From IMG/VR virus record IMGVR_UViG_3300032268_000986, positions 186,001 through 250,000 of that record: 64,000 nt of DNA, one strand, 5' to 3'. A program made the translations under genes and the position numbers. Each line of letters opens with the position of its first letter. Position 1 is the stretch's first letter. Shown piece after piece: positions 23,386 to 41,537 of this stretch. The notes beneath the pieces are model-generated. The model ran no database searches. It saw only the letters and a list, made by a program, of their open reading frames with translations, and was not told the DNA's origin.

Positions 23386-23694
23386 TTATCTGAACAAGAT
23401 CAAGGCCATGAGCACAGCCTGCACTATAAAACCCACACCAATTGTGACAATGTTCAGCACATCTCGGAGCACCACTGCTCGCAAGAACATCAGCACCAGG
23501 CCTGCCCAGGCAAACAGCACAATATCCAAGTTGGGTGTGCGGTCACTCAAGCCAGTCATCAGGGCCAACAAGGTGGGCACTGTGGCTGCATGTATCACAA
23601 TGGCTGCCAGCCAGCCCAGAGTTTCTGCTGAAATCTTGCTGAGATGTTCGGTAAAAAAGTTTCGAACTGCGGGTGCAAGGTCATTGATGTTCAT
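23386..23694 (-). CDS. 3-TM membrane protein (possible holin/lysis accessory)
   Basis: three hydrophobic segments; overlaps the lysin stop. Confidence 0.55.
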   Translation of the reverse strand: MNINDLAPAVRNFFTEHLSKISAETLGWLAAIVIHAATVPTLLALMTGLSDRTPNLDIVLFAWAGLVLMFLRAVVLRDVLNIVTIGVGFIVQAVLMALILFR

Positions 23695-24248
23695 AAGCGT
23701 TCTCCATAAAAAATGTGTCGTCCAATTTTTTCAATTCGGGGTTTGTTCCAGCCAGGGTTGACATAGTCAGCATGGTAGTAGATGGCATGTTTGAGACCGG
23801 GCAGTCTAAAGCCTTCCAGCAGGACCTTTTTGGCCACTGTTTCGCTTTCTTCCCACATGGGTGAGTTCACGGGTCGCACACGACTCTTGTTTTCGCAGTA
23901 CCAGCTGAACTGACATACCACACGTTCGTAGAACACGTTCTTTTGATAAACCACACCACAGACCGAGTTGGCAAAGCGACCGCTTTCCAGTCGGTTCAGT
24001 GTGACCTGTGCCACACCAACTTTGCCTTCAAATGGCTCACCGGCAGCTTCGTGATAGATGTTGCGAGTCAGACATTCCAGTTGTTGGGTGCGTTCGGCTG
24101 CTGTGACATAATTGTCTGGCATGCCAGTTTTTTGGTTACGCAGAGCATCAAGATGATTTTTGCATACCATGATTAGAACCACACTCACCAGCAATAAAGC
24201 CAGTGCTTGCATGATCCGTGAACTCCATTTGGCTAGTTCATTGGTCAT
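23691..24248 (-). CDS. SleB/Hydrolase_2 cell-wall hydrolase with N-terminal TM anchor
   Basis: CLTRNIYHEAAGE, VAQVTLNR, VCGVVYQ, CQFSW, YYHADYVNPGW, IGRHIFY. Confidence 0.92.
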   Translation of the reverse strand: MTNELAKWSSRIMQALALLLVSVVLIMVCKNHLDALRNQKTGMPDNYVTAAERTQQLECLTRNIYHEAAGEPFEGKVGVAQVTLNRLESGRFANSVCGVVYQKNVFYERVVCQFSWYCENKSRVRPVNSPMWEESETVAKKVLLEGFRLPGLKHAIYYHADYVNPGWNKPRIEKIGRHIFYGERL

Positions 24249-24368
24249 ATTTTCTCCTTTGTTTTGAGTGGTAGTTTTACTTAACCATCGGCTAATCAAA
24301 CCACCCCAAAAGTGGGCCAAAAAGGCAAGTTTTTGCCATTATATAGGGAGATAACTCCCTATACTACA

Positions 24369-24397
24369 ATTATACTACAAACAAGATTATTTGTCAA
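24369..24397 (-). promoter_or_regulatory. sigma70 consensus promoter upstream of the lysin
   Basis: TTGACA-17-TATAAT. Confidence 0.8.
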
Positions 24398-25205
24398 ACT
24401 TGCACACCGGAATTGGGGTCATCTTGTGCATGTTTCTAGCACGAAGTTCTTGATAGCGTTGAAGCTTTTTTCTATCATCTGCTGACAGTTTGGCACTGCC
24501 CGGCATCGCCGAATCCACGGCCTGGGCCCGTTTTAAAAAGTCCAAGGCCATCATGCGCTCTAGATCTGGATAGCTCATGCCCAGTTGATCTTCATCATTG
24601 CGGCCATCGGGCCACAGGCCATCGGTGGGTGCAGCGTCAATGATTTCTTGCTCAAGACCCAGCTCGCGTCCCATGTCCCAGACTTGAGTTTTGAGACAGT
24701 CACCAATGGGCGAAATATCCACCCCACCGTCACCATATTTGGTAAAGAAGCCCACGCCAAAGTCTTCTACTCGATTGCCGGTGCCCACCACAATTGCCCC
24801 ATGGCATTGTGCAATTTGGTACAGGGTCATCATTCTCAGTCTAGCACGTGAGTTGGCAAAAGCCAGCTCAACTTGTGATGCATTTTCTGCATCACAAAAC
24901 GGCGCAGTTTTCTTTTCAAATGCCAAAAACACCGGAGTCAAGTCCATGCTCATGTGTGTGACAGTATCTGGGTAACGTTCCAGCAACCAAGTGGCCTGCA
25001 TGCTACTGCGGCGGTCCAGTTTTCGATGCTGACGTATGGGCATCTGCACCACAATGGTTTTCAAGCCAGTTTGGGCGCACAAAGCACTCACAACTGATGA
25101 GTCAATTCCGCCTGAAATTCCCACCACAAAAGTATCAATTTTGGCACTCCGGGCATACTGCTTTAACCACCGCACAATGTGGTTGATACGTTGTCGAGGT
25201 GTCAT
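24387..25205 (-). CDS. nadE: NH3-dependent NAD+ synthetase
   Basis: VVGISGGIDS, NSRARLRM, GTGN..E...GFFTKYGDG, PTDGLW, DEDQLG. Confidence 0.95.
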   Translation of the reverse strand: MTPRQRINHIVRWLKQYARSAKIDTFVVGISGGIDSSVVSALCAQTGLKTIVVQMPIRQHRKLDRRSSMQATWLLERYPDTVTHMSMDLTPVFLAFEKKTAPFCDAENASQVELAFANSRARLRMMTLYQIAQCHGAIVVGTGNRVEDFGVGFFTKYGDGGVDISPIGDCLKTQVWDMGRELGLEQEIIDAAPTDGLWPDGRNDEDQLGMSYPDLERMMALDFLKRAQAVDSAMPGSAKLSADDRKKLQRYQELRARNMHKMTPIPVCKFDK

Positions 25206-25735
25206 AGCTTTGGTGGGGGCATTTGTTTGAGTTTTTTCCATACATCTGCTTTCTCTTTGCATTTCTTTTCCAGTTTACGATAACGCTCGCCCAGTCGGCG
25301 CAGATCATCCCAGTCTTTTTCCAGTTCCACATTGGGTTGCATCCAGTTCAACCTCTCTTCCATGGCTGCCATCCATTTGACCAAGCTCTTGCCATTGATG
25401 TCAAGATCAGCGTTGTCGCCTTGCAGGCTCATCTTGCCACCTTGCTCAACATGAGCCGATGACGACCCCCAGGTGATATTGCCATTGACAAACGGGTTGG
25501 TGGTGGAAGTGGTCCAAACTGTGTTTGGCATGGTGTTGGAAAATGTGTAATTGCCAGTGGCCCCAGTGGCACCACCAATGGTATATCCCCCATTGGACAC
25601 AGTTGACATATCCCCGTAATTGACATCTGAATATTGCAAAGATGACAAGTCAATTGTGTCAGCCGCTGATGTAAGTGTTATTGTGTCTGTGTCCCAGGCG
25701 CTGTAAATGTCGCCTGAATTTTTGTTAGGGTCCAA
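25202..25735 (-). CDS. hypothetical protein (Thr/Gly-rich N-terminus, coiled-coil C-terminus)
   Basis: 177 aa ORF in an operon. Confidence 0.65.
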   Translation of the reverse strand: MDPNKNSGDIYSAWDTDTITLTSAADTIDLSSLQYSDVNYGDMSTVSNGGYTIGGATGATGNYTFSNTMPNTVWTTSTTNPFVNGNITWGSSSAHVEQGGKMSLQGDNADLDINGKSLVKWMAAMEERLNWMQPNVELEKDWDDLRRLGERYRKLEKKCKEKADVWKKLKQMPPPKL

Positions 25736-27441: not shown

Positions 27442-28208
27442 CACAGCACCTTTACATAGTTGAGTTGAGTAACCCCATCTCGGTGTGCCTTGACAGCACC
27501 CTTGATGGTAAGAGTTGCACCGGGTTCAAACCTTGCCCGGTTGCTGAACATCACAGGTTGATCCGCCTGGGTCACACCACGAATCCACCAAATGTTGTAT
27601 TGTTGACTGTAGGTGGCACTGACCACTTCCACAGTGGTTGTGATCTTGTCGCCAGGTTGGCCAATCAAGCCACCACGAGCAACACGCAGGCGTTGTTGCT
27701 GTTCTTGACGTGCCACTGCACGTTGATGGCTTTGTGGCAGGCATGCTATCACTGCCAGTTCATAACGATTGCGCACAGTGTCAAACACATCGGTCACAGC
27801 CAAGACCTTGCTCACACTTTGATCAAAGTCATTGAGTCGACCCTTGAGAGCTCGGAATGTAAGATCGTTCTGCAAAAACTTGCGAGCATCTTCGCCGGCC
27901 ACTACATCTTGTGGCAACAGCTGATCAGGGTTGTGCAAAAACTCTACCATGATGTCGCGATTACGGCGTGTGGTACTGAGCACTTCACCTTTGTCACCGT
28001 ATTCATTGCGACCTTCTTTGACATACTCGCCGTTCACACGTTGGGCGGCACTGGCCGCGGCCCACACAATGTTAACTGGGAATTGTTTTGACACCGGCTG
28101 AGCCGCACGGCGTTGGCGAGGTTGATACTCATCATGGTCATCTGCTTGACCCAGACGCTTGATTTCAAGATCACTCATGTGTGTTACATCTACAAATCCA
28201 GGCATCAT
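27441..28208 (-). CDS. hypothetical protein with C-terminal OB-fold-like domain
   Basis: IGQPGDK ... IKGAVKAHRDGVTQLNYVK; GGAG RBS before MMPGF. Confidence 0.65.
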   Translation of the reverse strand: MMPGFVDVTHMSDLEIKRLGQADDHDEYQPRQRRAAQPVSKQFPVNIVWAAASAAQRVNGEYVKEGRNEYGDKGEVLSTTRRNRDIMVEFLHNPDQLLPQDVVAGEDARKFLQNDLTFRALKGRLNDFDQSVSKVLAVTDVFDTVRNRYELAVIACLPQSHQRAVARQEQQQRLRVARGGLIGQPGDKITTTVEVVSATYSQQYNIWWIRGVTQADQPVMFSNRARFEPGATLTIKGAVKAHRDGVTQLNYVKVL

Positions 28209-28215
28209 GTTCTCC

Positions 28216-28470
28216 TTAAACCCAAAAAGATTCGTTGCGTTTGTTGGCACCAATTCGGCTGTACACAATCTCACGAACCATGGTGTCAGTGGCTTCGCCA
28301 AACATTTTTTCTTCGCTGAGCACCATCAGGGCTCGATAAGTCTGTTTCCAAGTCAGGTTGTTTTCACAGGCAGCCACCACAATGGCATGCACTGCGGCAT
28401 TGCCAAGTTCGGTAAACATGCCATAATCTTGCACAGTACCAGTTAGATTGTATTCAATTTCAATGCTCAT
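28216..28470 (-). CDS. hypothetical early protein
   Basis: AAGGAG RBS, own promoter; EATDTMVRE motif. Confidence 0.7.
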   Translation of the reverse strand: MSIEIEYNLTGTVQDYGMFTELGNAAVHAIVVAACENNLTWKQTYRALMVLSEEKMFGEATDTMVREIVYSRIGANKRNESFWV

Positions 28471-28500
28471 TCCTGACTCCTTGTTGCTCACTATACCCAT

Positions 28501-28529
28501 ATTATAACAAATTGGCCTTTATTGGTCAA
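28501..28529 (-). promoter_or_regulatory. repeated early promoter
   Basis: TTGACC-17-TATAAT; the -35 box contains the upstream stop codon. Confidence 0.8.
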
Positions 28530-28792
28530 CCAAATTCATACATGTGCTGAGCCATGCTGGGATCCAATTTCACCAGGGCTGTTGCAGCCGCTGTGAGTTC
28601 GCGGTAGCGTCGGTTAGTTTCTGTGCGGCTCAGTTCACCATCACAGGAAAGATTTTCTGGGCTAAGAGCACAGTCAATCATTTTGGCCACACGCAGGCGG
28701 CCTGCCGCGGTTGCAACCTCGTAAGGTGTGTGCTTGCCAAAACAGGCGTTCCACTTGTTTTGACGATCAATATAGGCTTGCAGTGCTTTCAT
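28526..28792 (-). CDS. hypothetical early protein
   Basis: LSPENLSCDGE motif; AAGGAG RBS. Confidence 0.75.
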   Translation of the reverse strand: MKALQAYIDRQNKWNACFGKHTPYEVATAAGRLRVAKMIDCALSPENLSCDGELSRTETNRRYRELTAAATALVKLDPSMAQHMYEFG

Positions 28793-28821
28793 CTTGGCTC
28801 CTTTTGCGTTAACATGTTCAA

Positions 28822-28850
28822 ATTATAGCAGATTGGGAATTATTGGTCAA
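28822..28850 (-). promoter_or_regulatory. repeated early promoter
   Basis: TTGACC-17-TATAAT. Confidence 0.8.
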
Positions 28851-29032
28851 CCAAAATAGTTGTCAACTGCACCTTCAATACCTTCTTCAAAGGTGTCGCT
28901 GTAAAATCCCTCAATGTCCTGCTCAAAGAACTTGGCCAGCTCTTCTTTGGAAGGAGCCTTGCCAGTGAGTTCTTTGGCATACTCTTTGACTGACTTGATA
29001 GCATGTTTTGGAACAGTGATCGTGATCTTCAT
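28847..29032 (-). CDS. hypothetical early protein
   Basis: 61 aa, AAGGAG RBS. Confidence 0.7.
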   Translation of the reverse strand: MKITITVPKHAIKSVKEYAKELTGKAPSKEELAKFFEQDIEGFYSDTFEEGIEGAVDNYFG

Positions 29033-29062
29033 TTAGCACTCCTTTTGTTACAATATGTCCAT

Positions 29063-29091
29063 ATTATAGCATTTGGGCAATTATTGGTCAA
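29063..29091 (-). promoter_or_regulatory. repeated early promoter
   Basis: TTGACC-17-TATAAT. Confidence 0.8.
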
Positions 29092-29096
29092 CCATG

Positions 29097-29125
29097 AAAA
29101 AAGCCCTAGTACCAGTAGGGCTTTT
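29097..29125 (-). terminator. rho-independent terminator
   Basis: AAAAGCCCTA/TAGGGCTTTT inverted repeat. Confidence 0.75.
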
Positions 29126-29139
29126 GTAGTACTTGAGTA

Positions 29140-29394
29140 TTAGTTGTTTTTTCGCAACACTTTTTCACTTTTTATGCGCCGTTGTTTTTTTGCAAACTCT
29201 TGTTCAATATAGTACTTGACCAGAGTTCGTTGCATCATGGTTATTAAATCGCCGTGATCTTCGGGCACCACAAATCGCACAGGGCATCGACCCCAGGTAT
29301 TGGATTTCACAAACTCATGATACCATTCGCGATGTTGTTTACTGGCAGGATTGAACACTGTCCAGGGACGACCACACAAAGCAAGTTGACTCAT
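29140..29394 (-). CDS. conserved phage protein
   Basis: RPWTVFNP..KQHR.WY.EF...TWG.CP.RF; start MSQLAL. Confidence 0.7.
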   Translation of the reverse strand: MSQLALCGRPWTVFNPASKQHREWYHEFVKSNTWGRCPVRFVVPEDHGDLITMMQRTLVKYYIEQEFAKKQRRIKSEKVLRKNN

Positions 29395-29396
29395 TA

Positions 29397-29954
29397 TTAC
29401 ACCTTGAAGTAAGTTACATGGGTACCGAGATTCCACTGAGCAGGATCCACCGCGGTACCATCGTGTGTTTCCAACTGAATACCCAACATAGAGTATCTTT
29501 GCCAAAACCACCAAACATCCGGGGTTTTGTTGGCCAGTCCCTGCTTGTGCAACAGGGAATGGTTCTTTTTCTTCAGCAAGCATGTGGGCGGATTCATGGC
29601 CAGTTCAACTGAGATCCTGCCCTGTATCAGCAAGGCCGCCAAGGTAGATGCCGGGATCACATGCTCAAAGTCAGTTTTGTCTGTGGGCTTGAGATCCAAT
29701 TCTCGATAGTGAGCACGAATGCGCTCTTTGATGGCATAACCATGATATCGACGCAACAAGAAATCAATTGCATCACGCAACAATCGAGCAGTCTGATCCA
29801 GGCGTTCCATCTTGCGATATGCTGCCAAACACAGTCGAAGACCACGACGCACAAACCGTTCGGTGGCCACGTATGCCGCACCATCCCGCACCACCCGACC
29901 GTAGTCGGGTGATGTGAAACCATGGACTTGTTGTTCCAGTAGTTTCAAGTCCAT
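29397..29954 (-). CDS. putative HNH-like nuclease
   Basis: DFEHVIP ... PTCLLKKKNH; start MDLKLL. Confidence 0.5.
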   Translation of the reverse strand: MDLKLLEQQVHGFTSPDYGRVVRDGAAYVATERFVRRGLRLCLAAYRKMERLDQTARLLRDAIDFLLRRYHGYAIKERIRAHYRELDLKPTDKTDFEHVIPASTLAALLIQGRISVELAMNPPTCLLKKKNHSLLHKQGLANKTPDVWWFWQRYSMLGIQLETHDGTAVDPAQWNLGTHVTYFKV

Positions 29955-29955
29955 G

Positions 29956-31155
29956 TTAGAACAAGTCCTTTGCATCAGGATAAAACTGCGTTTGAATGTT
30001 GAGTCGGGGCATGTGCATGGGCAGGCCTGCGGCATCCTTCCAACGCTTCTTGAGTAGGTGCCAGAAAAATGTGCCACCTTGTGTCCAGTCCTTGTTCATT
30101 CTTGGACGTTCTGGGCGCATGCTAACATCATGATTGGCATAGTAGCCTTCCCACCAGTTCAGGTAGGCAGTTTCCAACTGCGCCCAGAATGCACCAGCTT
30201 CATCAAAGTCGGCACTGAACAATTGGTGACACAGTTGTGCTAGACTGCGAACTTCGTCGTCGGTGTAGGTGACATTGTCGCCTTGAGCCATTTTAAGAAA
30301 CCCCAGGATAATGGGTGCTTCTTTTGTGTTTATGGCACGTGGTGTAAAGCCCAACACTGTCTGTGCATACACACAGAACTGTCGCACAATTTCTGGTGAC
30401 ACCTTGCGATCCACAATGTCTTGAACTCGACTTATGGCGCCGGGCTGATCAGTGTCCCCAAACTTTTTGTCAGTAAGGAACAAATCTGCGGCTTCAAGAT
30501 ATTGTTGCTTCTTTTCCACTTCCAACCACTCGGGGTAGGTGGCACCGTCAACACGAACACCATACACCTGTTGTTGGAAGATGTCAATCTTGTCAAGAAG
30601 CTTTTTGCCGCCTTCGGTGTTGCTCTCAATGAAGTTGTTGCGAATTTCGGCCTTGGTCTTGACGTCGTATACCACTACAGGGATATCTACGTCCCGGGGA
30701 TCCAGGCCCAGGATAAACACAGCAATCACGTAAAATGCCACCGCAGTGTGTTGTCCATCCCAGCTGGCATACAGGCCTTTGCCCAGGTACACCAACTCAG
30801 TATCCGCATCGGGTGCCACAGTGTACACCTGCACTGGCATGGCCTGCCAGCTACGCCACTTCTCAATGATCTCCAGGACCCAGGAGATGTTGAGTTGACG
30901 TTGCATTGTGGTGTCAATGATGATGTCACTGAGTCGAACCGTTTCGGCTCGACAGATGGGCATGTCTGAAAATAGTTTGACGTTGGGATGTCGCACAATC
31001 CAACCTTGAATGTTTCGCTTGAGCGTGGAGCGAATGGTGGCCTGTGTGTTGAGGGGATACAGACTCATGGTCTGGTTCCAGCGTTCCTTGAGGTCCACAA
31101 AGTGGCTCTGGGTGCTATGATATTTTGCGTTGACTTGGCTTGCATACGTTGCCAT
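29956..31155 (-). CDS. ParB/Srx-fold (DGQH) domain protein
   Basis: IDTTMQRQL ... WDGQHT ... R.NF. Confidence 0.65.
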   Translation of the reverse strand: MATYASQVNAKYHSTQSHFVDLKERWNQTMSLYPLNTQATIRSTLKRNIQGWIVRHPNVKLFSDMPICRAETVRLSDIIIDTTMQRQLNISWVLEIIEKWRSWQAMPVQVYTVAPDADTELVYLGKGLYASWDGQHTAVAFYVIAVFILGLDPRDVDIPVVVYDVKTKAEIRNNFIESNTEGGKKLLDKIDIFQQQVYGVRVDGATYPEWLEVEKKQQYLEAADLFLTDKKFGDTDQPGAISRVQDIVDRKVSPEIVRQFCVYAQTVLGFTPRAINTKEAPIILGFLKMAQGDNVTYTDDEVRSLAQLCHQLFSADFDEAGAFWAQLETAYLNWWEGYYANHDVSMRPERPRMNKDWTQGGTFFWHLLKKRWKDAAGLPMHMPRLNIQTQFYPDAKDLF

Positions 31156-31235
31156 GGTACTTCCTTTAGATTGTGAGTTGCAACAATTTTACCTTTGTTG
31201 CCTACTGTTTTGTACTGACACTATTGTCAGCACAG

Positions 31236-31269
31236 TTTCTAGTATAACACTAGAAATCTTTTATGTCAA
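31236..31269 (-). promoter_or_regulatory. sigma70 promoter with overlapping palindrome
   Basis: TTGACA-17-TATACT; TTTCTAGT-N5-ACTAGAAA spans the -10 box. Confidence 0.7.
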
Positions 31270-32004
31270 GACCCTGACTGCCACTTGTTGATGGCGCCCC
31301 ACTCGACCAATGTATTCATAACTGCGACCATACGCAGCCACATGCTCAATCCAGGCGCGGTATTCATCCATGTACCAGCCCGGATAGTTGAGATACTCAT
31401 CAAACACAATCACTGTGCCGGGCACAATGTTGTCTTTCAAACTGTTTAATATGGTAACTGTGCTGGAATACAAATCACAGTCAATGTGCAACAATGCAAT
31501 GGGTCTAGTCAATTGTATTTTGGTCTTGAAACCTGGCAGTGTTTGATCAAACCAACCAACATGTAATTCACAGTTGCCACGAACTCGAGGCAGTGAACTT
31601 CTTGCAAAGAAGCCCTTGCGCATGCGACTGGTCCAGTCTTCGGGCAAGCCCACAAATCCATCAAATCCATGCACAGGTTTGTCAGGCAACCAGTGTGCAA
31701 ATTGATTCAGTGTGCGGCCTGTGGCCACACCAAACTCCAGCACAGTACCTCTAGACAACAGGTCAGGGTCAAGTTGTGTGTTTGCAATCCACTCATGAAG
31801 GTCATAGTCGGTATTAAAGTTGGGCACAGCTCGCATGTGTTCTAGCACATAGCGGGCCGACTCTTCAGACGCCAAGCGATTGGCTGTGAAGTCTGTGTCT
31901 ATCACATCAGTGTGCAGGCCCAACAGTTGTTGTTGTGCTCGCGTGGGCTGTGGGTATCTCCACCACTCGCCCAGCCTATCTCGAATTCTGTGTAAGTTTA
32001 TCAT
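31261..32004 (-). CDS. TylF/class I SAM methyltransferase
   Basis: LEFGVATG, GFDGFVGLP, GWFDQTL, LLHIDCDLYSS, IVFDE. Confidence 0.88.
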   Translation of the reverse strand: MINLHRIRDRLGEWWRYPQPTRAQQQLLGLHTDVIDTDFTANRLASEESARYVLEHMRAVPNFNTDYDLHEWIANTQLDPDLLSRGTVLEFGVATGRTLNQFAHWLPDKPVHGFDGFVGLPEDWTSRMRKGFFARSSLPRVRGNCELHVGWFDQTLPGFKTKIQLTRPIALLHIDCDLYSSTVTILNSLKDNIVPGTVIVFDEYLNYPGWYMDEYRAWIEHVAAYGRSYEYIGRVGRHQQVAVRVLT

Positions 32005-32333
32005 GTGATTAATATTTCATCTCTATTTGCACGGTCACTGTATATGCGTTGACCCAATCGGCGTATGGTGTCAGCAGACACTTGTGGGTTGGCTTCAAAC
32101 ATGTCTCGTATGTCATCCACAGTGATACCATCAGTGGCGCTGACAACATAGATCTCATAGTGCCGTTGCATATTATAACGTGCGCGAAGCATGAGATGGT
32201 GTAGATTGGGAATAGTGTATTTTAGTTCTTCGCCCTTGAGAGCGGCCCAGGTGCGTTGCTGTTCATCCAGTGTGATGTTGCCAACGTATTCCAGTCCGGT
32301 GTTGTCCCAGACCACAATGAACTGGTGATTCAC
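32001..32333 (-). CDS. hypothetical protein
   Basis: GTG start coupled to the upstream stop; WDNTGLE, LRARYN.QRHYEIY. Confidence 0.7.
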   Translation of the reverse strand: MNHQFIVVWDNTGLEYVGNITLDEQQRTWAALKGEELKYTIPNLHHLMLRARYNMQRHYEIYVVSATDGITVDDIRDMFEANPQVSADTIRRLGQRIYSDRANRDEILIT

Positions 32334-32569
32334 AGCATGAACCTCTTGAGATAATCTCGAGCCTGGCTGCATTCTTCCAGTTGCTTGAACTGTTCTCGCT
32401 CGATCACTTCCATGATCACCAGTTGTTGCAGATCATCGGCTGTTTTTTGTTCTTCAGCATCCAACAGCTCGTACCACTCTAGGTATTCCTCAGCGGAATC
32501 AATGGTCCACATAGCATCCAGCATGTCTACCTGATGGGACGTCAGATTGGTCAGGGTAATTTTGTCCAT
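32330..32569 (-). CDS. hypothetical protein
   Basis: AAGGAG RBS; promoter TTGACA-17-TACAAT at 32589-32617. Confidence 0.7.
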   Translation of the reverse strand: MDKITLTNLTSHQVDMLDAMWTIDSAEEYLEWYELLDAEEQKTADDLQQLVIMEVIEREQFKQLEECSQARDYLKRFML

Positions 32570-32637
32570 GTTTGCTCTCCTTTGTGTTATTGTACAAGAT
32601 CTGCAATTTTGTGTCAAGTACTAATAAAGTACTAAGA

Positions 32638-32868
32638 TTATTTCCAGCACAGCGTGAACGCAAAGTAGTCGCGCTCGTTGTCAAAGTAAAAGTGGTATCT
32701 TCCCGGACCAATGGCAGTGCTGACGTCAATGAGTTCCCAACGCCATTCGTCACGGAGTTCGTGCTTGCACCATGCCAAGATGTGATCAAGTTTGCCAGAT
32801 GGTTTGGAGATCTCACAACTGAATCGAAATGAGTCTTTGGTGCGGTAATCGGCAACTTGCATCACCAT
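32638..32868 (-). CDS. small phage protein (F-x-F-D...F-x-L-x-W family)
   Basis: WC...W...YHFYFDNERDYFAFTLCW. Confidence 0.65.
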   Translation of the reverse strand: MVMQVADYRTKDSFRFSCEISKPSGKLDHILAWCKHELRDEWRWELIDVSTAIGPGRYHFYFDNERDYFAFTLCWK

Positions 32869-32875
32869 GTAATTA

Positions 32876-33115
32876 TCACTGTGCCCATTTCAGCTGATAA
32901 AAGGTTGCCAGAGCAGGATCACGGAAATAGAAGTTCACATGTCTGGGCGTTGTAAGGCCCGAAAATCCATCATCCTGGTAAGGCATAAACTGCCAGGCAA
33001 AATCAACTCCCATGACCAAGCCCGATTGTTCCAGGCCTTGTTTGAGATCAATGGCCTGTGATGGACCTACGTCTGCCAGTGTTACACAGGTATTCTTTTC
33101 GTATGATTCGATCAC
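32876..33115 (-). CDS. small phage protein (same C-terminal family)
   Basis: VNFYFRDPALATFYQLKW. Confidence 0.65.
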   Translation of the reverse strand: MIESYEKNTCVTLADVGPSQAIDLKQGLEQSGLVMGVDFAWQFMPYQDDGFSGLTTPRHVNFYFRDPALATFYQLKWAQ

Positions 33116-34954: not shown

Positions 34955-35207
34955 TGGTCATGCTCTCTGAAGTGTAGTCCAGGAAGTCGCCGGCAGCATT
35001 TCGAATCAACGCAGCCGAAGGATCAATTATGACAACTTCACAGTCATGATTGGTGATTTCATAATCAACAAATGCATGCGTTTCATCCCCAGTGGCATAG
35101 ACTCTAAACCAAATTTGATTTTCAAATCCGCGGATCAGGAATCCACGTTCACCAATAGCCCTGGTCTCACTTGGCTCGATTAAATCTCCACTGTTTTCAA
35201 TTTCCAT
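34944..35207 (-). CDS. hypothetical protein
   Basis: 87 aa in an operon. Confidence 0.55.
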   Translation of the reverse strand: MEIENSGDLIEPSETRAIGERGFLIRGFENQIWFRVYATGDETHAFVDYEITNHDCEVVIIDPSAALIRNAAGDFLDYTSESMTIVK

Positions 35208-36103
35208 TCGCTGGCCTTTGGTTCATAGTTGATATATCCGCGTGGGTTGCACACTACACGAGTTTCGCCAATCATGTAGTCAAAGTCATCATGAGTGTGA
35301 CCGTGTGTCCACAATCGAATTTGTGGATGGTCAACAATAAAATCATCCATGTTTGAACTGTAACCACCATTCATAATAGTGTCATGTGCATAGCGAGGAT
35401 GTGTGCTCTTACGGCTGGGCGCATGATGCCCCACCACCACAAACTTGTGATCAAATCGTCCTTCAACGATCTGTTGTATATAACCTCGAGTCAGTGCATG
35501 TTCCTCGGCTGCATCTTCGGGCGAGAAACGACCCGGTTCTTGTTTCTTCTTTGTGGCAATCTGTGACTTGTTGCCCTGCTCGTCTTCCACATACTGCCCT
35601 TGCTCGTCCTTTTGGTACAGCGGCACAGTGCGGTACACTGGCCGCAGACTGTTTTTCACACAGATAAAATCGTTCATCATCTTGCGCATGTGAAACAAAG
35701 TAAGAGCATCACCATTGTTCATGTCAGTCCACAAGGTGCCACCAATGAAAGTAACATCGTCAATGACCTTGATCTCGCGTTCCAGCACATGGAGGTTCTT
35801 GATGTAGGCCAACTTGGCCTTGATGTCCGACACCGTGGTACCAACGTCACCGTGATAGTGTTCATGGTTGCCTGCCACATAGATCACATGTGGAAAACGT
35901 TCTGCACAACGCCTAAAGAATTCATGGAACATTTCCGAGCGCCAACGTGCAAACCCCATTTCGGTTTGACGACGATCCCACATGTCCAAGTCAGCGGCCA
36001 CACAGATATCACCTGACAGAATCAAAACATCAGCGTTCTGATCGTTTTGTATGTCTAGGTCACCAAACTCTAGGTGTACATCTGATGTCACAGCAATTTT
36101 CAT
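35180..36103 (-). CDS. calcineurin-like metallophosphoesterase
   Basis: SDVHLE, GD, GNHE, HHAP, HGHTH, NPRGY. Confidence 0.9.
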   Translation of the reverse strand: MKIAVTSDVHLEFGDLDIQNDQNADVLILSGDICVAADLDMWDRRQTEMGFARWRSEMFHEFFRRCAERFPHVIYVAGNHEHYHGDVGTTVSDIKAKLAYIKNLHVLEREIKVIDDVTFIGGTLWTDMNNGDALTLFHMRKMMNDFICVKNSLRPVYRTVPLYQKDEQGQYVEDEQGNKSQIATKKKQEPGRFSPEDAAEEHALTRGYIQQIVEGRFDHKFVVVGHHAPSRKSTHPRYAHDTIMNGGYSSNMDDFIVDHPQIRLWTHGHTHDDFDYMIGETRVVCNPRGYINYEPKASEWKLKTVEI

Positions 36104-36453
36104 ATTTTTACCTTTTTTCTAGACAACTGCACACGCAGGGTTTCTACAGCCTGGGTATCACCGTTGTATATGGAAGCACTTTTGTCAGGATACCGAGCCT
36201 GGAAATGCTGTACAATCTCATCAAGGTCACTGCCTTGACAGACAAATTCCTTGTTGATTGAATTATAACACAAATAGGTATTGCCAGCAACCTCAACCGT
36301 GAGTGGAATTAGGTCACCTCTTTCCAGTTCGCTGGCTATTTTGGCAGTGTCATGAGTCTGGGTCTCTAGGCCTAACCAACCAACAATGAACCGAGCCAAC
36401 CAAAACGTCAGCACCGATATCAAGAACAGATCCAACAATTGAAACCAATCCAT
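36100..36453 (-). CDS. membrane-anchored hypothetical protein
   Basis: N-terminal TM; F.CQG...E...F..RYP. Confidence 0.65.
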   Translation of the reverse strand: MDWFQLLDLFLISVLTFWLARFIVGWLGLETQTHDTAKIASELERGDLIPLTVEVAGNTYLCYNSINKEFVCQGSDLDEIVQHFQARYPDKSASIYNGDTQAVETLRVQLSRKKVKI

Positions 36454-36454
36454 G

Positions 36455-36760
36455 TCAGCCTCGCATGCTTTCCAAGGTGATCATCTTGCCCAGTTCTCTT
36501 TCAAAATCTAATTCGTCGGGAATGATGTATAGCTTGTGACTGTTGCGATCTGTTTTGTGATCATAGTGTCGAAATGTCACAATTTTACCACCAATGGCTC
36601 GTCGAACAGTGATATTTAATCCGTTTTCACCGTCAACATCGTCACTGGCTCGAATCAGTCGAGACGCTTTGGTCTGCACAACTTCGTTTCTACTGTCACG
36701 GAGCTCGCGATTGAAATCCCAGCCCCACTTCATCATCATTGACCATAACCATCTAATCAT
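36455..36760 (-). CDS. hypothetical protein
   Basis: start MIRWLW; A.GG.IV...YD...D...LYII. Confidence 0.65.
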   Translation of the reverse strand: MIRWLWSMMMKWGWDFNRELRDSRNEVVQTKASRLIRASDDVDGENGLNITVRRAIGGKIVTFRHYDHKTDRNSHKLYIIPDELDFERELGKMITLESMRG

Positions 36761-37212
36761 ACATCGGCCTTTCTGTTTATCAAATACTGTTCCCACTGCA
36801 CCCACTGATTCCGCACCAGGAAACCCCAGTCTCGGCACTTGCGCCCGGGCATGAACAAGGTCCAACAAGTCACTTCAGGATCCAATTCAATGCGATGATA
36901 GGTGTTGGCACTGGCCCAGCGAACACTACCGGCACCGCACCATCGGGCAATCTCACCTGTCTTTTGGCCTGCACTGTCAAACTGTGGGCGCCACTCGTAG
37001 TAACCGCCCCGAAGGATTATGGTAAGAAAGGGCCAGGGATGATCATGCACATCATCGGGATCACTCTTGAGAAACTTGTGCAAGAACACATTGAATGGAA
37101 AACGTTCACGATCCTTTAGAAAAAGATAATATCTTTCCAGGTATGGCTCATTGTCCACTCGGTCATACACAATGCGTTTGCGGCCCAGGCGTTCTAGAAT
37201 TTTAAGTAGCAT
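36757..37212 (-). CDS. cupin-fold protein
   Basis: HDHPW...ILRGGYYE...HRIEL...WTLF. Confidence 0.7.
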   Translation of the reverse strand: MLLKILERLGRKRIVYDRVDNEPYLERYYLFLKDRERFPFNVFLHKFLKSDPDDVHDHPWPFLTIILRGGYYEWRPQFDSAGQKTGEIARWCGAGSVRWASANTYHRIELDPEVTCWTLFMPGRKCRDWGFLVRNQWVQWEQYLINRKADV

Positions 37213-37232
37213 GTGGTTTCCTTTGTGTGACA

Positions 37233-37290
37233 ATTATACATGGCGTAGTCATTTATGTCAAGAAAAAGCCGGCATTGCACCGGCTTGTGG
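37233..37290 (-). promoter_or_regulatory. terminator hairpin followed by consensus promoter
   Basis: AAGCCGG/CCGGCTT-T tract, then TTGACA-17-TATAAT (37233-37261). Confidence 0.75.
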
Positions 37291-40042: not shown

Positions 40043-40294
40043 TCAACGATGCGGGGTCAACAACCAACCTTGGCCCGACGCTCGATGATACCAGTTGTAG
40101 AATGGTTCAGAGATGGTCAATGTTCCGTGCGTGGACAAATGCCAATATTTAGGCAATACCTCAATGTTGTCAATGATGACAGAGTCATCTGCATTGAAAA
40201 TCAAATTGTCATGTAGATTGGCCATGGTGGCAACTCCATTCACCACAACATTTAATTCTAACTCAGTAGCCAGCAGTTCTGAAAAGTTCTTCAT
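40043..40294 (-). CDS. hypothetical protein
   Basis: PFY.WYH..SGQGWLL.P; follows the radical SAM gene. Confidence 0.6.
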   Translation of the reverse strand: MKNFSELLATELELNVVVNGVATMANLHDNLIFNADDSVIIDNIEVLPKYWHLSTHGTLTISEPFYNWYHRASGQGWLLTPHR

Positions 40295-41537
40295 ATTGGG
40301 GCAGGTATGTTAGTATGCTGTTGCCGCGGCTGGTTTCAATACGCTTCAAGTATGTCACCAACTCGGGCAATCTAAAACTTTCATCACCTTCACTTTTTAA
40401 ATAGTTTACATAACTTTGCAAGTCTTGTATTATGTGTTGTCGGGACACATTTGGATTTCGACTGTTCACAATGGTTGGGACAACCGTGCCATGCTGAGCA
40501 ATCCAGGACTCCATGCGATCAATAATGGGCTGGCGATAAATCATGGGCAACACTGACGGGCGCATGCACTCGGGATGATCCAAAAAATTGCAACTTTCAA
40601 TTGCTATCGATCGTTCCCAGGCATACTGGTACACACTAAGCAACGAGTCAATGGTCAATATTGTAGGAGTGGTACGGAACTGCATCAACCAATCATGCTG
40701 TTGTGCAATGGCCAACCACTTGTTCAGTGTTTCATGTATCTTGGGCACAGTGGCAGGCCAACGCACATAGTCATTTACAGTTTCAAATGTTTCAATACTC
40801 ATTCCAAGATTGACGCCGGCAAATTGCGTCAGCAGATCAACTGTTTGCTGATCCCATGTAATGAGATTTGTGGTAAATCCAATGGTGGCCGTGCGGTGTA
40901 TACCTGTTTGGATCAGTGCTTCCAGCATGGTTTTAAAAGCTGGTGTGATCAAGGTTTCGCCACCAATAAAATGTAGATATTGAATGTGAGGGCTTGCCCG
41001 AAGCATGGCAACAAATCGATCCACCAGCACTGGGTCATCGGTCCAATTTGCTCTTGGCAGTTGATCAATAAAACCTATGCGTTTCCACTCACTGGCCAAT
41101 CTTGAGCTGGCCACAGGAGTACAAAAAATACAGGCACTGTTGCAATAGTTCCCAAGATCTATCTGCCAATCTTGTGGAAACTGCACAAATTCTTGAGAGG
41201 TAAATGTATCAAACCAAGGACTTGATGCCATGGTTTTTTCAAACTGATCAACACGCACACCGGTCTTGAGTAATTGTCGTTGTCGGCCACTGATCTTGTT
41301 GTGACCTTCCATTTGATAGCACTTTTTGCATGCCTCTACTGGTTGGCCTTGTAGCATACGTGCCCGGATGTCTGACATGTGTTGCTGAAAAAACTCCACA
41401 GGATCGCTGTCACGTATATTGATCTTGGCAACTATATTCTTGTCTGCCCAACGGCAATAGGTCATGTCACCATTGTTTGTGATCCGCATGTGAAACCATG
41501 GGCTGGGACAAAAATATTGTTTTAAATCGTTAGGCAC
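40263..41537 (-). CDS. radical SAM protein with N-terminal SPASM/twitch-like domain
   Basis: CNSACIFC (CxxxCxxC), GGE motif, N-terminal CPSPW..C..C..C. Confidence 0.88.

What the first reader, a model, noticed from the sequence alone, without database searches (positions are those of the whole stretch)
29397..31269. Self-contained ParB/DGQH + EHxxP-HNH two-gene module (split GmrSD/SspE-like architecture)
Seen: a 399-aa protein with QR...DGQHT motifs is followed 1 nt later by a 185-aa protein with DFEHVIP...CLL...H. The pair has its own consensus promoter with an 8-bp palindrome over the -10 box and two leader hairpins (CTGACA/TGTCAG, GCAACAA/TTGTTGC). Established: GmrSD and SspE combine a ParB/Srx DGQ(Q/H)R domain with an EHxxP HNH nuclease to sense modified DNA. 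Inference: an autoregulated phage-borne nuclease module for excluding competitor phages or degrading host DNA, with the HNH part as a separate gene.
Basis: partly seen in the sequence, partly recalled or inferred. Interest (0 to 1): 0.66.

Follow-up and report, generated by a model that had tools for sequence, protein, structure and literature searches.

The report
Phage ParB-like plus EHxxP nuclease-like operon
A 343-kb freshwater jumbo phage carries a tightly coupled gene pair, a DndB/GmrS-like ParB-fold protein and a small protein with a GmrD-like EHxxP motif, with its own promoter, a conserved structured leader and a terminator; it looks like a very divergent, phage-only version of a known two-part DNA nuclease, but the nuclease fold and the target are not shown.

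Summary
On the minus strand a 399-aa gene (A, 31155-29956) is followed 1 nt later by a 185-aa gene (B, 29954-29397). Upstream lie a near-consensus sigma-70 promoter, an inverted repeat over the -10 box and two leader hairpins. An 84-aa gene and an intrinsic terminator complete the unit.

No Pfam, PADLOC, PHROG or NCBIfam model recognises either protein. B follows A in all 33 viral-contig loci with room. The pair was not found in 50,697 GenBank phage records or 185,579 species-representative prokaryote genomes, apart from one MAG contig. The leader hairpins show strong covariation and the RNA model hits only this position.

Verdict: a divergent, phage-restricted variant of the GmrS/GmrD (ParB + HNH-like) architecture. 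Separate genes are already the arrangement of the original E. coli GmrS/GmrD. Nuclease activity, target and autoregulation are untested.

The parts
31264..31269 (-). -35 hexamer TTGACA; it directly precedes the TAA stop of the upstream methyltransferase gene
31241..31249 (-). extended -10, TGtTATACT
   Evidence: sigma-70-like promoters found by the consensus scan 85-131 nt upstream of gene A in most relatives checked (16 of 20 loci)
31236..31256 (.). 8-bp inverted repeat TTTCTAGT / ACTAGAAA across the -10 box (candidate operator)
   Evidence: a palindrome over the -10 is also seen in L004 (78% identical A) but not in the more distant loci
31156..31235 (-). 5' leader with two hairpins, P1 (about 31234-31211, loop ATAG) and P2 (31201-31180, loop ending TAAAA), followed by the conserved AAT[CT]ACAATTTGRAG-type Shine-Dalgarno context
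   Evidence: Fold -23 kcal/mol, z -3.3. Covariance model R1 hits only upstream of gene A, in 23 sources out of 372 kb searched. Covariation score 0.748 against 0.267 shuffled, 0 of 500 shuffles as high. P1 plus P2: 80% of cells paired, all 15 pairs with changes on both sides. No Rfam match. The motif occurs once in the window.
29956..31155 (-). gene A, 399 aa, DGQHT ParB/Srx-fold protein (P0001)
30601..30951 (-). ParB/Srx domain of A (residues 69-185) with QR (85-86), DGQHT (133-137) and FxxxN (175-179)
30010..30597 (-). helical C-domain of A (residues 187-382, eight helices)
29397..29954 (-). gene B, 185 aa (P0002): helical hairpin (22-81) plus a C-terminal alpha/beta part
29535..29711 (-). 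candidate beta-beta-alpha-metal core of B (residues 82-140): strand ending in E97-H98, P101, P123, strand 124-128, helix 129-137 with H132 (H/D/E/N in most of the wide family)
29140..29394 (-). third gene, 84 aa, starts 2 nt after B's stop; no family match; accessory
   Evidence: a homologue directly follows B only in L004, L005 and L008
29093..29125 (-). intrinsic terminator (10-bp G+C-rich stem, then a U run)
31261..32004 (-). upstream neighbour: TylF/Methyltransf_24-type SAM methyltransferase (not a core part)
   Evidence: adjacent in 11 of 33 loci and in L002

Best explanation
The unit most likely encodes a two-subunit, GmrS/GmrD-like DNA endonuclease made early in infection.

Shown:
- A host-type sigma-70 promoter drives one transcript: a structured leader, A, B, an 84-aa gene and a terminator.
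- A and B are translationally coupled and never separated in the viral-contig loci examined.
- A has a ParB/Srx NTP-binding fold with the DGQHR-domain motifs, followed by the helical domain that follows ParB in DndB and GmrS.

Inferred:
- A binds DNA and senses some feature of it, possibly using a nucleotide, although Thr replaces the phosphate-binding Arg.
- A hands the DNA to B, or activates B.
- B's invariant [E/D]-H at a strand end, with H/D/E/N at position 132 on the following helix, would form a His-Me-finger-type metal site that nicks or cuts DNA.
- The target would be DNA that differs from the phage's own, either the host chromosome or a co-infecting phage. No DpdA/TGT-, thymidylate-synthase- or N6/N4-methylase-type DNA-modification gene was found in this phage, so a modification-dependent enzyme would spare its own genome.
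- The conserved leader hairpins, which lie just upstream of the ribosome-binding site, probably set translation or stability of this potentially toxic pair.
For: - Gene order, 1-nt spacing, promoter and terminator.
- Strict A-then-B linkage in 33 of 33 viral-contig loci, down to 41% (A) and 32% (B) identity.
- On a MAG contig a B homologue (45% identical) follows a distant A relative that keeps the canonical DGQHR (hhalign probability 86%, E 5e-6).
- ParB/Srx fold of A.
- QR, DGQH and FxxxN are invariant and align in register with DndB at P 0.0011. Known relatives DUF262 and DndB give P 0.0008 with the same method; reversed controls for A give 0.079 or higher.
- Eight-helix C-domain.
- B: [E/D]HxxP conserved (H98 invariant, P101 nearly so), and R153 and Y154 invariant, across 54 wide-family members.
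- B aligns with GmrSD_C so that EHxxP matches EHxxP and H132 matches the second Asn of the E/D-H-N-N motif. P is 0.0065-0.023 against 0.19 or higher in 21 controls; motifs from PMC4619093.
- Distant B relatives sit next to hsdS-hsdR, DUF2779, WYL, ParDE and RT-trypsin genes in bacterial contigs.
Against: - No family model recognises A or B: Pfam, PHROGs, PADLOC and NCBIfam. GmrSD_C finds nothing in the whole phage even at E 10 or lower.
- A profile search of 1.84 billion representative proteins with B reached only 146 small proteins and no GmrSD-sized enzyme.
- The B-DUF1524 signal rests on 14-47 columns around one motif.
- The structural Asn of the HNH motif is a Pro in B.
- Fold searches with whole B are swamped by its helical hairpin, and the C-terminal half could not be folded alone.
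- The Arg of DGQHR, which binds nucleotide phosphates in relatives, is Thr in all 33 family members.
- A against DUF262 is not significant (P 0.18).
- The complex prediction gave no verdict.
- No activity, target or phenotype data exist.
Confidence: 0.45

Rival explanations
1. A DNA-modification or regulatory module. A would act like DndB or DpdB: a ParB-type protein that binds DNA and tunes or targets a modification enzyme, or represses its own promoter. B would be an accessory factor rather than a nuclease. The neighbouring SAM methyltransferase or other enzymes would do the chemistry.
For: - A is closest to DndB in profile comparison, in length (399 aa against 370-416 aa) and in architecture.
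- A methyltransferase lies directly upstream in 11 of 33 loci.
- Other relatives have FkbM or CmcI methyltransferases, an epimerase, a halogenase-like gene or a P-loop+GNAT gene beside the pair.
- There is a palindrome over the -10 box.
- DndB is described as an ATP-modulated autoregulator in a reference cited by PMC12065111.
Against: - The methyltransferases are of sugar or natural-product O-methyltransferase types (TylF, FkbM, CmcI), not DNA methylase families.
- They are absent from two thirds of the loci, whereas B is always present.
- No Dnd, Ssp or Dpd partner genes (for example TGT) were found in the phage.
- B's invariant His, Arg and Tyr argue for catalysis.
- The -10 palindrome is not conserved beyond the nearest relative.
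Confidence: 0.18
2. An anti-defence or host-takeover enzyme acting on something other than bulk DNA. For example, it could cut a host immune nucleic acid or RNA, with A as the specificity or NTP-binding subunit.
For: - Early-type sigma-70 promoter, within a block of small genes with further sigma-70-like promoters at 29091 and 28866/28850.
- Not found in the 185,579 species-representative prokaryote genomes scanned, apart from one MAG contig.
- Distant B relatives lie in defence-island-like contexts with varied, non-ParB partners.
Against: - No similarity to any described anti-defence protein was found.
- ParB/DGQHR domains are described as DNA-modification sensors in GmrSD and SspE.
- Nothing here points to RNA.
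Confidence: 0.12
3. A small-molecule enzyme pair. A would be a ParB/Srx-fold kinase or transferase like SerK or SbnI, working with B and the neighbouring sugar-type enzymes on a metabolite or glycan.
For: - The distant A relative P0388 weakly hits the SerK model (E 0.008).
- Neighbours are often sugar-type or natural-product-type enzymes.
- The Arg-to-Thr change suggests a changed nucleotide site.
Against: - The QR, DGQH and FxxxN motifs and the helical C-domain are those of the DNA-associated DGQHR group.
- The neighbouring enzymes vary from locus to locus and are not conserved with the pair.
Confidence: 0.08
4. A ParB-type genome partition or organisation device of a jumbo phage, with B as a clamp partner.
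For: The best fold matches are chromosomal ParB, Noc and KorB CTPase domains.
Against: - No helix-turn-helix or centromere-binding domain of the ParB type was matched.
- No ParA gene lies beside the pair among the ORFs examined.
- A has the DGQH motif set rather than the partition ParB arginine-patch motif (that motif is from my own knowledge, not tested here).
- B has conserved catalytic-looking residues.
Confidence: 0.04

Closest known systems
GmrS/GmrD (GmrSD) type IV restriction enzyme, including BrxU and SspE (DUF262 + DUF1524)
   Same: - A ParB/Srx-fold domain with QR, DGQ(Q/H) and FxxxN motifs and a helical middle domain, combined with a protein bearing (E/D)HxxP.
- The original E. coli CT596 system is likewise two separate genes (PMC4619093).
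- The two parts are inherited together.
   Different: - Neither gene scores against the GmrSD_C, DUF262 or PADLOC models.
- DGQHT replaces DGQQR.
- B is 185 aa. A Pro stands where GmrD has its first Asn, and only about 23 residues separate His from the second strand.
- The pair was found only on viral or metagenome contigs (many over 100 kb), not in cellular defence islands.
- It carries a dedicated conserved leader RNA.
DndB / DGQHR-domain proteins (PF14072, TIGR03187), including DpdB
   Same: - Similar length (399 aa against 370-416 aa).
- ParB domain plus helical C-domain.
- QR, DGQH and FxxxN align in register at hhalign P 0.0011.
   Different: - Below the Pfam threshold.
- Thr replaces the signature Arg.
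- No dnd, ssp or dpd partner genes were found.
- The partner is instead the B family.
Phage His-Me / HNH nucleases (for example the T5 SciA endonuclease, PDB 9qgv)
   Different: - I could not confirm SciA's fold class from the literature held here.
- B has an extra N-terminal helical hairpin and an obligatory ParB-type neighbour.

Membership tests
ParB/Srx superfamily (fold) | ParB/sulfiredoxin alpha/beta fold around the nucleotide-binding loop | tested here: met
   [not shown]
DGQHR domain / DndB (PF14072, TIGR03187) | QR pair and FxxxN motif | tested here: met
   Q85, R86, F175 and N179 are invariant in 33 sequences and align with the DndB motifs. Motif definition from PMC4619093.
DGQHR domain / DndB (PF14072, TIGR03187) | nearly invariant pentapeptide DGQHR | tested here: not met
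   The motif is DGQHT, with T137 invariant. A distant relative paired with a B homologue does have DGQHR.
DGQHR domain / DndB (PF14072, TIGR03187) | score above the family model's threshold | tested here: not met
   No Pfam or NCBIfam hit at E 1 or lower for A or for any of 33 homologues. Profile-profile P 0.0011 only.
DUF262 / GmrSD_N (PF03235) | model match, or profile similarity to DUF262 domains | tested here: not met
   No Pfam hit. hhalign against 28 Bacteroidota GmrSD N-domains gives P 0.18, although the QR and DGQ motifs fall in register.
DUF1524 / GmrSD_C (PF07510) | model match | tested here: not met
   No hit for B or for 31 homologues. PF07510 finds nothing in the 343-kb phage at E 10 or lower, while it matches control genomes.
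DUF1524 / GmrSD_C (PF07510) | motif (I/L/V)(E/D)H(I/L/V)xPQ | tested here: met
   B has F-E-H-V-I-P-A. Across 54 wide-family members [E/D]H..P is kept, with H98 invariant. It aligns with EHIxP of GmrSD_C. The final Q is absent.
DUF1524 / GmrSD_C (PF07510) | L(G/A)NLxLLxxxN, the two Asn of the E/D-H-N-N site | tested here: inconclusive
   The first Asn position is P123. The second aligns with H132, which is H/D/E/N in most of the wide family. hhalign P 0.0065-0.023 against controls of 0.19 or higher.
His-Me finger nucleases (fold) | beta-beta-alpha-metal core with the catalytic His at the end of the first strand | tested here: inconclusive
   [not shown]
GmrSD / SspE systems (function) | NTP-stimulated cleavage that depends on a DNA modification; antiphage phenotype | not testable with these tools
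   Needs biochemistry and infection assays.
Known anti-phage defence systems (PADLOC-DB) | match to any component model | tested here: not met
   No PADLOC hit at E 1 or lower for A, B, the methyltransferase or the small downstream gene (scanned as an 86-aa read of 29143-29400).

The most novel reading that the evidence does not exclude
This is a phage-only weapon not yet described: a ParB(DGQHT)-EHxxP two-subunit nuclease, made early by large freshwater phages whose own DNA lacks the sensed mark. It would destroy host or rival-phage DNA. It would be held in check by a dedicated, covarying two-hairpin leader RNA that could be a new cis-regulatory RNA class. In effect it would be a type IV restriction logic turned around and used by a virus.
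Probability: 0.2. Interest if true: 0.75.

Novelty: new variant of a known kind. Interest (0 to 1): 0.55.

Why it matters
ParB/DGQHR sensors coupled to EHxxP nucleases are known as bacterial and prophage defences against modified phage DNA (GmrSD, BrxU, SspE).

Here is a large family of such pairs: at least 283 (A) and 309 (B) clusters at 90% identity, seen in lake and freshwater metagenomes from many studies. All loci recovered are viral or metagenome contigs, many over 100 kb. The family is invisible to current family models and was not found in the GenBank phage records searched.

If the pair is an active nuclease, it would show viruses using the same sensor-plus-nuclease design offensively. 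It would also give two new families to annotate in jumbo-phage genomes.

The operon-specific leader with covarying hairpins is a testable candidate for a new phage cis-regulatory RNA. If B is not a nuclease, the strictly conserved pairing still defines an unknown ParB-dependent function.

Tried and rejected
- Sequence searches of PDB with single proteins and with profiles found nothing relevant.
- Megablast and tblastn of A, B and two distant relatives against 50,697 GenBank phage records found no close relative. One distant ParB-like 'partitioning protein-like' gene in Microcystis phage Mwe-JY08 has no B-like neighbour.
- Scans of 185,579 species-representative genomes found nothing for A and one MAG contig for B.
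- ESM Atlas searches by features and by shape returned only unnamed, mostly viral clusters.
- BFVD returned only uncharacterised phage proteins, including one from Synechococcus phage S-T4 at E 0.016.
- Rfam has no match in 28000-33000.
- Complex prediction for A+B gave no verdict (score 0.01). This is neither for nor against binding.
- A literature search for SciA as an HNH enzyme found nothing usable.
- I looked for DNA-modification genes in the phage (TGT/DpdA, thymidylate-synthase-like, N6/N4 methylase) and found none.
- Rejected: that the methyltransferase is a core third component. It is present in only 11 of 33 loci.
- Rejected: that the leader motif is a general feature of this phage's genes. 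The motif occurs once in 64 kb, and the RNA model hits only upstream of gene A.
- Rejected: that the plus-strand ORFs overlapping A and B are genes. I looked for no support for them, and the minus-strand genes they overlap are conserved.
- No genetic code other than table 11 was needed.
Full report
**Context.** The window is bases 186001-250000 of a 342,865-bp IMG/VR virus record, estimated 99% complete. It is a jumbo phage. Other genes in the window match tail-fibre, protease, endolysin, NAD synthetase and radical SAM families. The stretch is held in lake and freshwater metagenomes of at least eight studies.

**Observation.** All features lie on the minus strand.
- Gene A runs from 31155 to 29956 (399 aa). 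Gene B runs from 29954 to 29397 (185 aa). One nucleotide separates A's stop from B's start.
- The promoter is TTGACA, 17 nt, then TGtTATACT (31269-31241), 11 of 12 consensus positions with an extended -10. The -35 hexamer directly precedes the stop codon of the upstream methyltransferase gene.
- The 8-bp inverted repeat over the -10 box and the two leader hairpins are present. The leader folds at -23 kcal/mol, z -3.3.
- I add two features. An 84-aa gene (29394-29140) starts 2 nt after B's stop. An intrinsic terminator lies at 29125-29093. Promoter to terminator therefore forms one compact unit.

**Gene A.**
- No Pfam, PHROG, PADLOC or NCBIfam model matches it or any of 33 homologues.
- The word search found 283 relatives. 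All those listed lack a Pfam domain, nearly all are about 400 aa, and some sit on contigs of up to 248 kb.
- The alignment shows invariant D81, T83, Q85, R86, then S131, W132, Q135, H136, T137 (D133 is nearly invariant), then R172, F175, N179.
- According to the GmrSD phylogenomics paper, the DGQHR domain is defined by a QR pair, the pentapeptide DGQ(Q/H)R and an FxxxN motif (PMC4619093). A has all three, except that the Arg is an invariant Thr.
- I built reference alignments from Bacteroidota genomes: 28 GmrSD N-domains, 23 C-domains and 6 DndB proteins.
- hhalign of A's ParB part against DndB gives P 0.0011 over 101 columns, with QR, DGQH and FxxxN in register. Against DUF262 it gives P 0.18. 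Reversed and unrelated controls for A give 0.079 or higher. The known relatives DUF262 and DndB give 0.0008 by the same method.
- A is therefore a DGQH-type ParB protein, nearest to DndB in form, but outside the curated families.

**Gene B.**
- No family model matches it or its homologues. GmrSD_C finds nothing in the whole phage at E 10 or lower.
- A profile search of 1.84 billion representative proteins found only 146 clusters, 38-347 aa long (full-length members about 180-250 aa). It found no GmrSD-sized protein and no fusion to A.
- Across 54 wide-family members, H98, R153 and Y154 are invariant. R68, Y83, P101, P123 and H179 are nearly so. The motif is [E/D]H..P, and position 132 is H, D, E or N in most.
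- The model (pLDDT 93) has a helical hairpin (22-81). It is followed by a strand ending in E97-H98, two short helices, strand 124-128 and helix 129-137. This order fits a beta-beta-alpha-metal core with an insertion.
- hhalign against GmrSD_C gives P 0.0065-0.023 in three versions of the B alignment, against 0.19 or higher in 21 controls. EHxxP aligns with EHxxP. H132 aligns with the second Asn of the E/D-H-N-N site, and P123 stands in place of the first Asn.
B is thus a plausible, not a proven, His-Me-type nuclease.

**Linkage.**
- In 32 viral-contig loci plus two places of a 63%-identical relative, B follows A on the same strand in all 33 with room. The tblastn matches of A and B lie 0-15 nt apart in most loci and up to about 160 nt apart in a few. 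This holds down to 41% (A) and 32% (B) identity.
- On a MAG contig, a B homologue (45% identical) follows a 345-aa protein with VQR, DGQHR and FxxxN. That protein is a distant relative of A (hhalign probability 86%, E 5e-6). The pairing of the B family with DGQH(R/T) ParB proteins is therefore older than the A family.
- The TylF/Methyltransf_24 methyltransferase is adjacent in only 11 loci. A P-loop+GNAT gene overlaps B's stop in 7 other loci. The 84-aa gene follows B in three. These are accessories.
- More distant B relatives occur in bacterial contigs: after hsdS-hsdR, after a DUF2779 protein and beside ParDE, near WYL and DUF2779, and near an RT-trypsin gene. Where the upstream gene could be read it is not a ParB protein. 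This points to nucleic-acid conflict systems.

**Distribution.** There is no relative in 50,697 GenBank phage records. The pattern scans found none in 185,579 species-representative genomes apart from the MAG contig.

**Leader.**
- A consensus scan finds a sigma-70-like promoter 85-131 nt upstream of A in most relatives checked (16 of 20 loci). It is followed by two hairpins and a conserved AAT[CT]ACAATTTGRAG-type ribosome-site context.
- RNAalifold predicts P2 with compensatory changes at all 8 pairs.
- A covariance model built on the leader hits once per locus, always just upstream of A, in 23 of 29 sources (372 kb, both strands) and nowhere else.
- P2 has a covariation score of 0.748 against 0.267 for shuffles (0 of 500 as high) and 0.15 or lower for slid partners.
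- P1 was not part of the model's structure. It is paired in 81.5% of cells, with changes on both sides at all 7 pairs.
- No Rfam family matches, and the 3' motif occurs once in the window.
- The palindrome over the -10 box is shared only with the 78%-identical relative. An operator there is possible but not conserved.
- The conserved element is the leader. Variable stems with conserved loops and flanks fit an RNA element better than a protein-binding DNA palindrome. That last point is inference.

**Expression.** A lake metatranscriptome run holds one 223-nt contig on 30884-31106, the 5' part of gene A, with 6 differences. Carried-over DNA cannot be excluded.

**Mechanism.** The best-supported reading is a GmrS/GmrD-like two-subunit nuclease made early from a host-type promoter. 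A would be the DNA- or nucleotide-binding sensor and B the catalytic subunit. I found no TGT-, thymidylate-synthase- or N6/N4-methylase-type gene in the phage. This would fit an enzyme that spares unmodified phage DNA, but it is an inference from absence. The Arg-to-Thr change, the missing first Asn and the failure of all family models lower confidence to about 0.45. The rivals are a DndB-like modification or regulatory role, an anti-defence function, a small-molecule enzyme pair, and genome partition. They are listed with their tests.

**Comparison and novelty.** The architecture is that of GmrS/GmrD, and separate genes are the original arrangement of that system, so 'split' is not new. What is new:
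- the depth of divergence, since both families are unmodelled;
- a distribution confined, in these searches, to viral and metagenome contigs;
- the DGQHT variant;
- the compact 185-aa B protein;
- the dedicated structured leader.

I rate it a new variant of a known kind, of moderate interest.

Noticed in passing
window 29140-29394 (-) and 29093-29125 (-): An 84-aa gene starts 2 nt after B's stop and is followed by a strong intrinsic terminator. It has no family match. A homologue directly follows B only in L004, L005 and L008.
   Followed up: partly
L012:7741-8805, L015:7726-8784, L035:7744-8796 and four more loci: In one subclade a protein of about 350 aa, with a P-loop NTPase N-terminus and a GNAT acetyltransferase domain, overlaps B's stop codon. 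It may be a third component there. It is absent from this phage.
   Followed up: partly
window 31261-32004 (-); L012:4085-4840; L032:8122-8814; L027:3901-4677; L019:3689-5263: Genes beside the pair are often sugar-type or natural-product-type enzymes: TylF/Methyltransf_24, FkbM and CmcI methyltransferases, an NAD epimerase, and a tryptophan-halogenase-like flavoenzyme. The reason is unknown.
   Followed up: partly
L077:4001-4924 (NCBI assembly contig), L079:4001-4576, L082:4001-4657, L085:303-887: Distant B-family proteins lie in bacterial defence-like neighbourhoods: directly after type I hsdS-hsdR; after a DUF2779 protein next to ParDE; near WYL and DUF2779; near an RT-trypsin gene. Where the upstream gene could be read it is not a ParB protein; in L083 it is a membrane protein.
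   Followed up: partly
G000:C1:115361-115585 (-), outside the window (L086): A second, weak ParB_N-like match (E 0.016, below the family cut-off) elsewhere in the same phage.
   Followed up: no
window 29063-29091, 28839-28866 and 28822-28850 (-): Further near-consensus sigma-70-type promoters (11 of 12 positions, two of the three with an extended -10) in front of the small genes downstream. This suggests a block of host-RNA-polymerase-transcribed early genes.
   Followed up: no
window 30884-31106: A lake-water metatranscriptome run holds a 223-nt contig covering the 5' part of gene A with 6 differences. This hints at transcription, but DNA carry-over is not excluded.
   Followed up: partly
L012, L014, L017, L019, L020, L025 and L035, about 60 nt upstream of gene A: A second leader type, with a conserved GATGGACATGCCAC..GGCTACGCCGGAG block in place of the simple P2 loop. 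The RNA model matches it only weakly (E 0.01-0.9). Its structure was not worked out.
   Followed up: no
window 23694-25262, 35183-37233 and 40266-41537 (-): Auxiliary-type genes in the window: endolysin, NAD synthetase, metallophosphoesterase, a cysteine-dioxygenase-like protein and a radical SAM protein.
   Followed up: no
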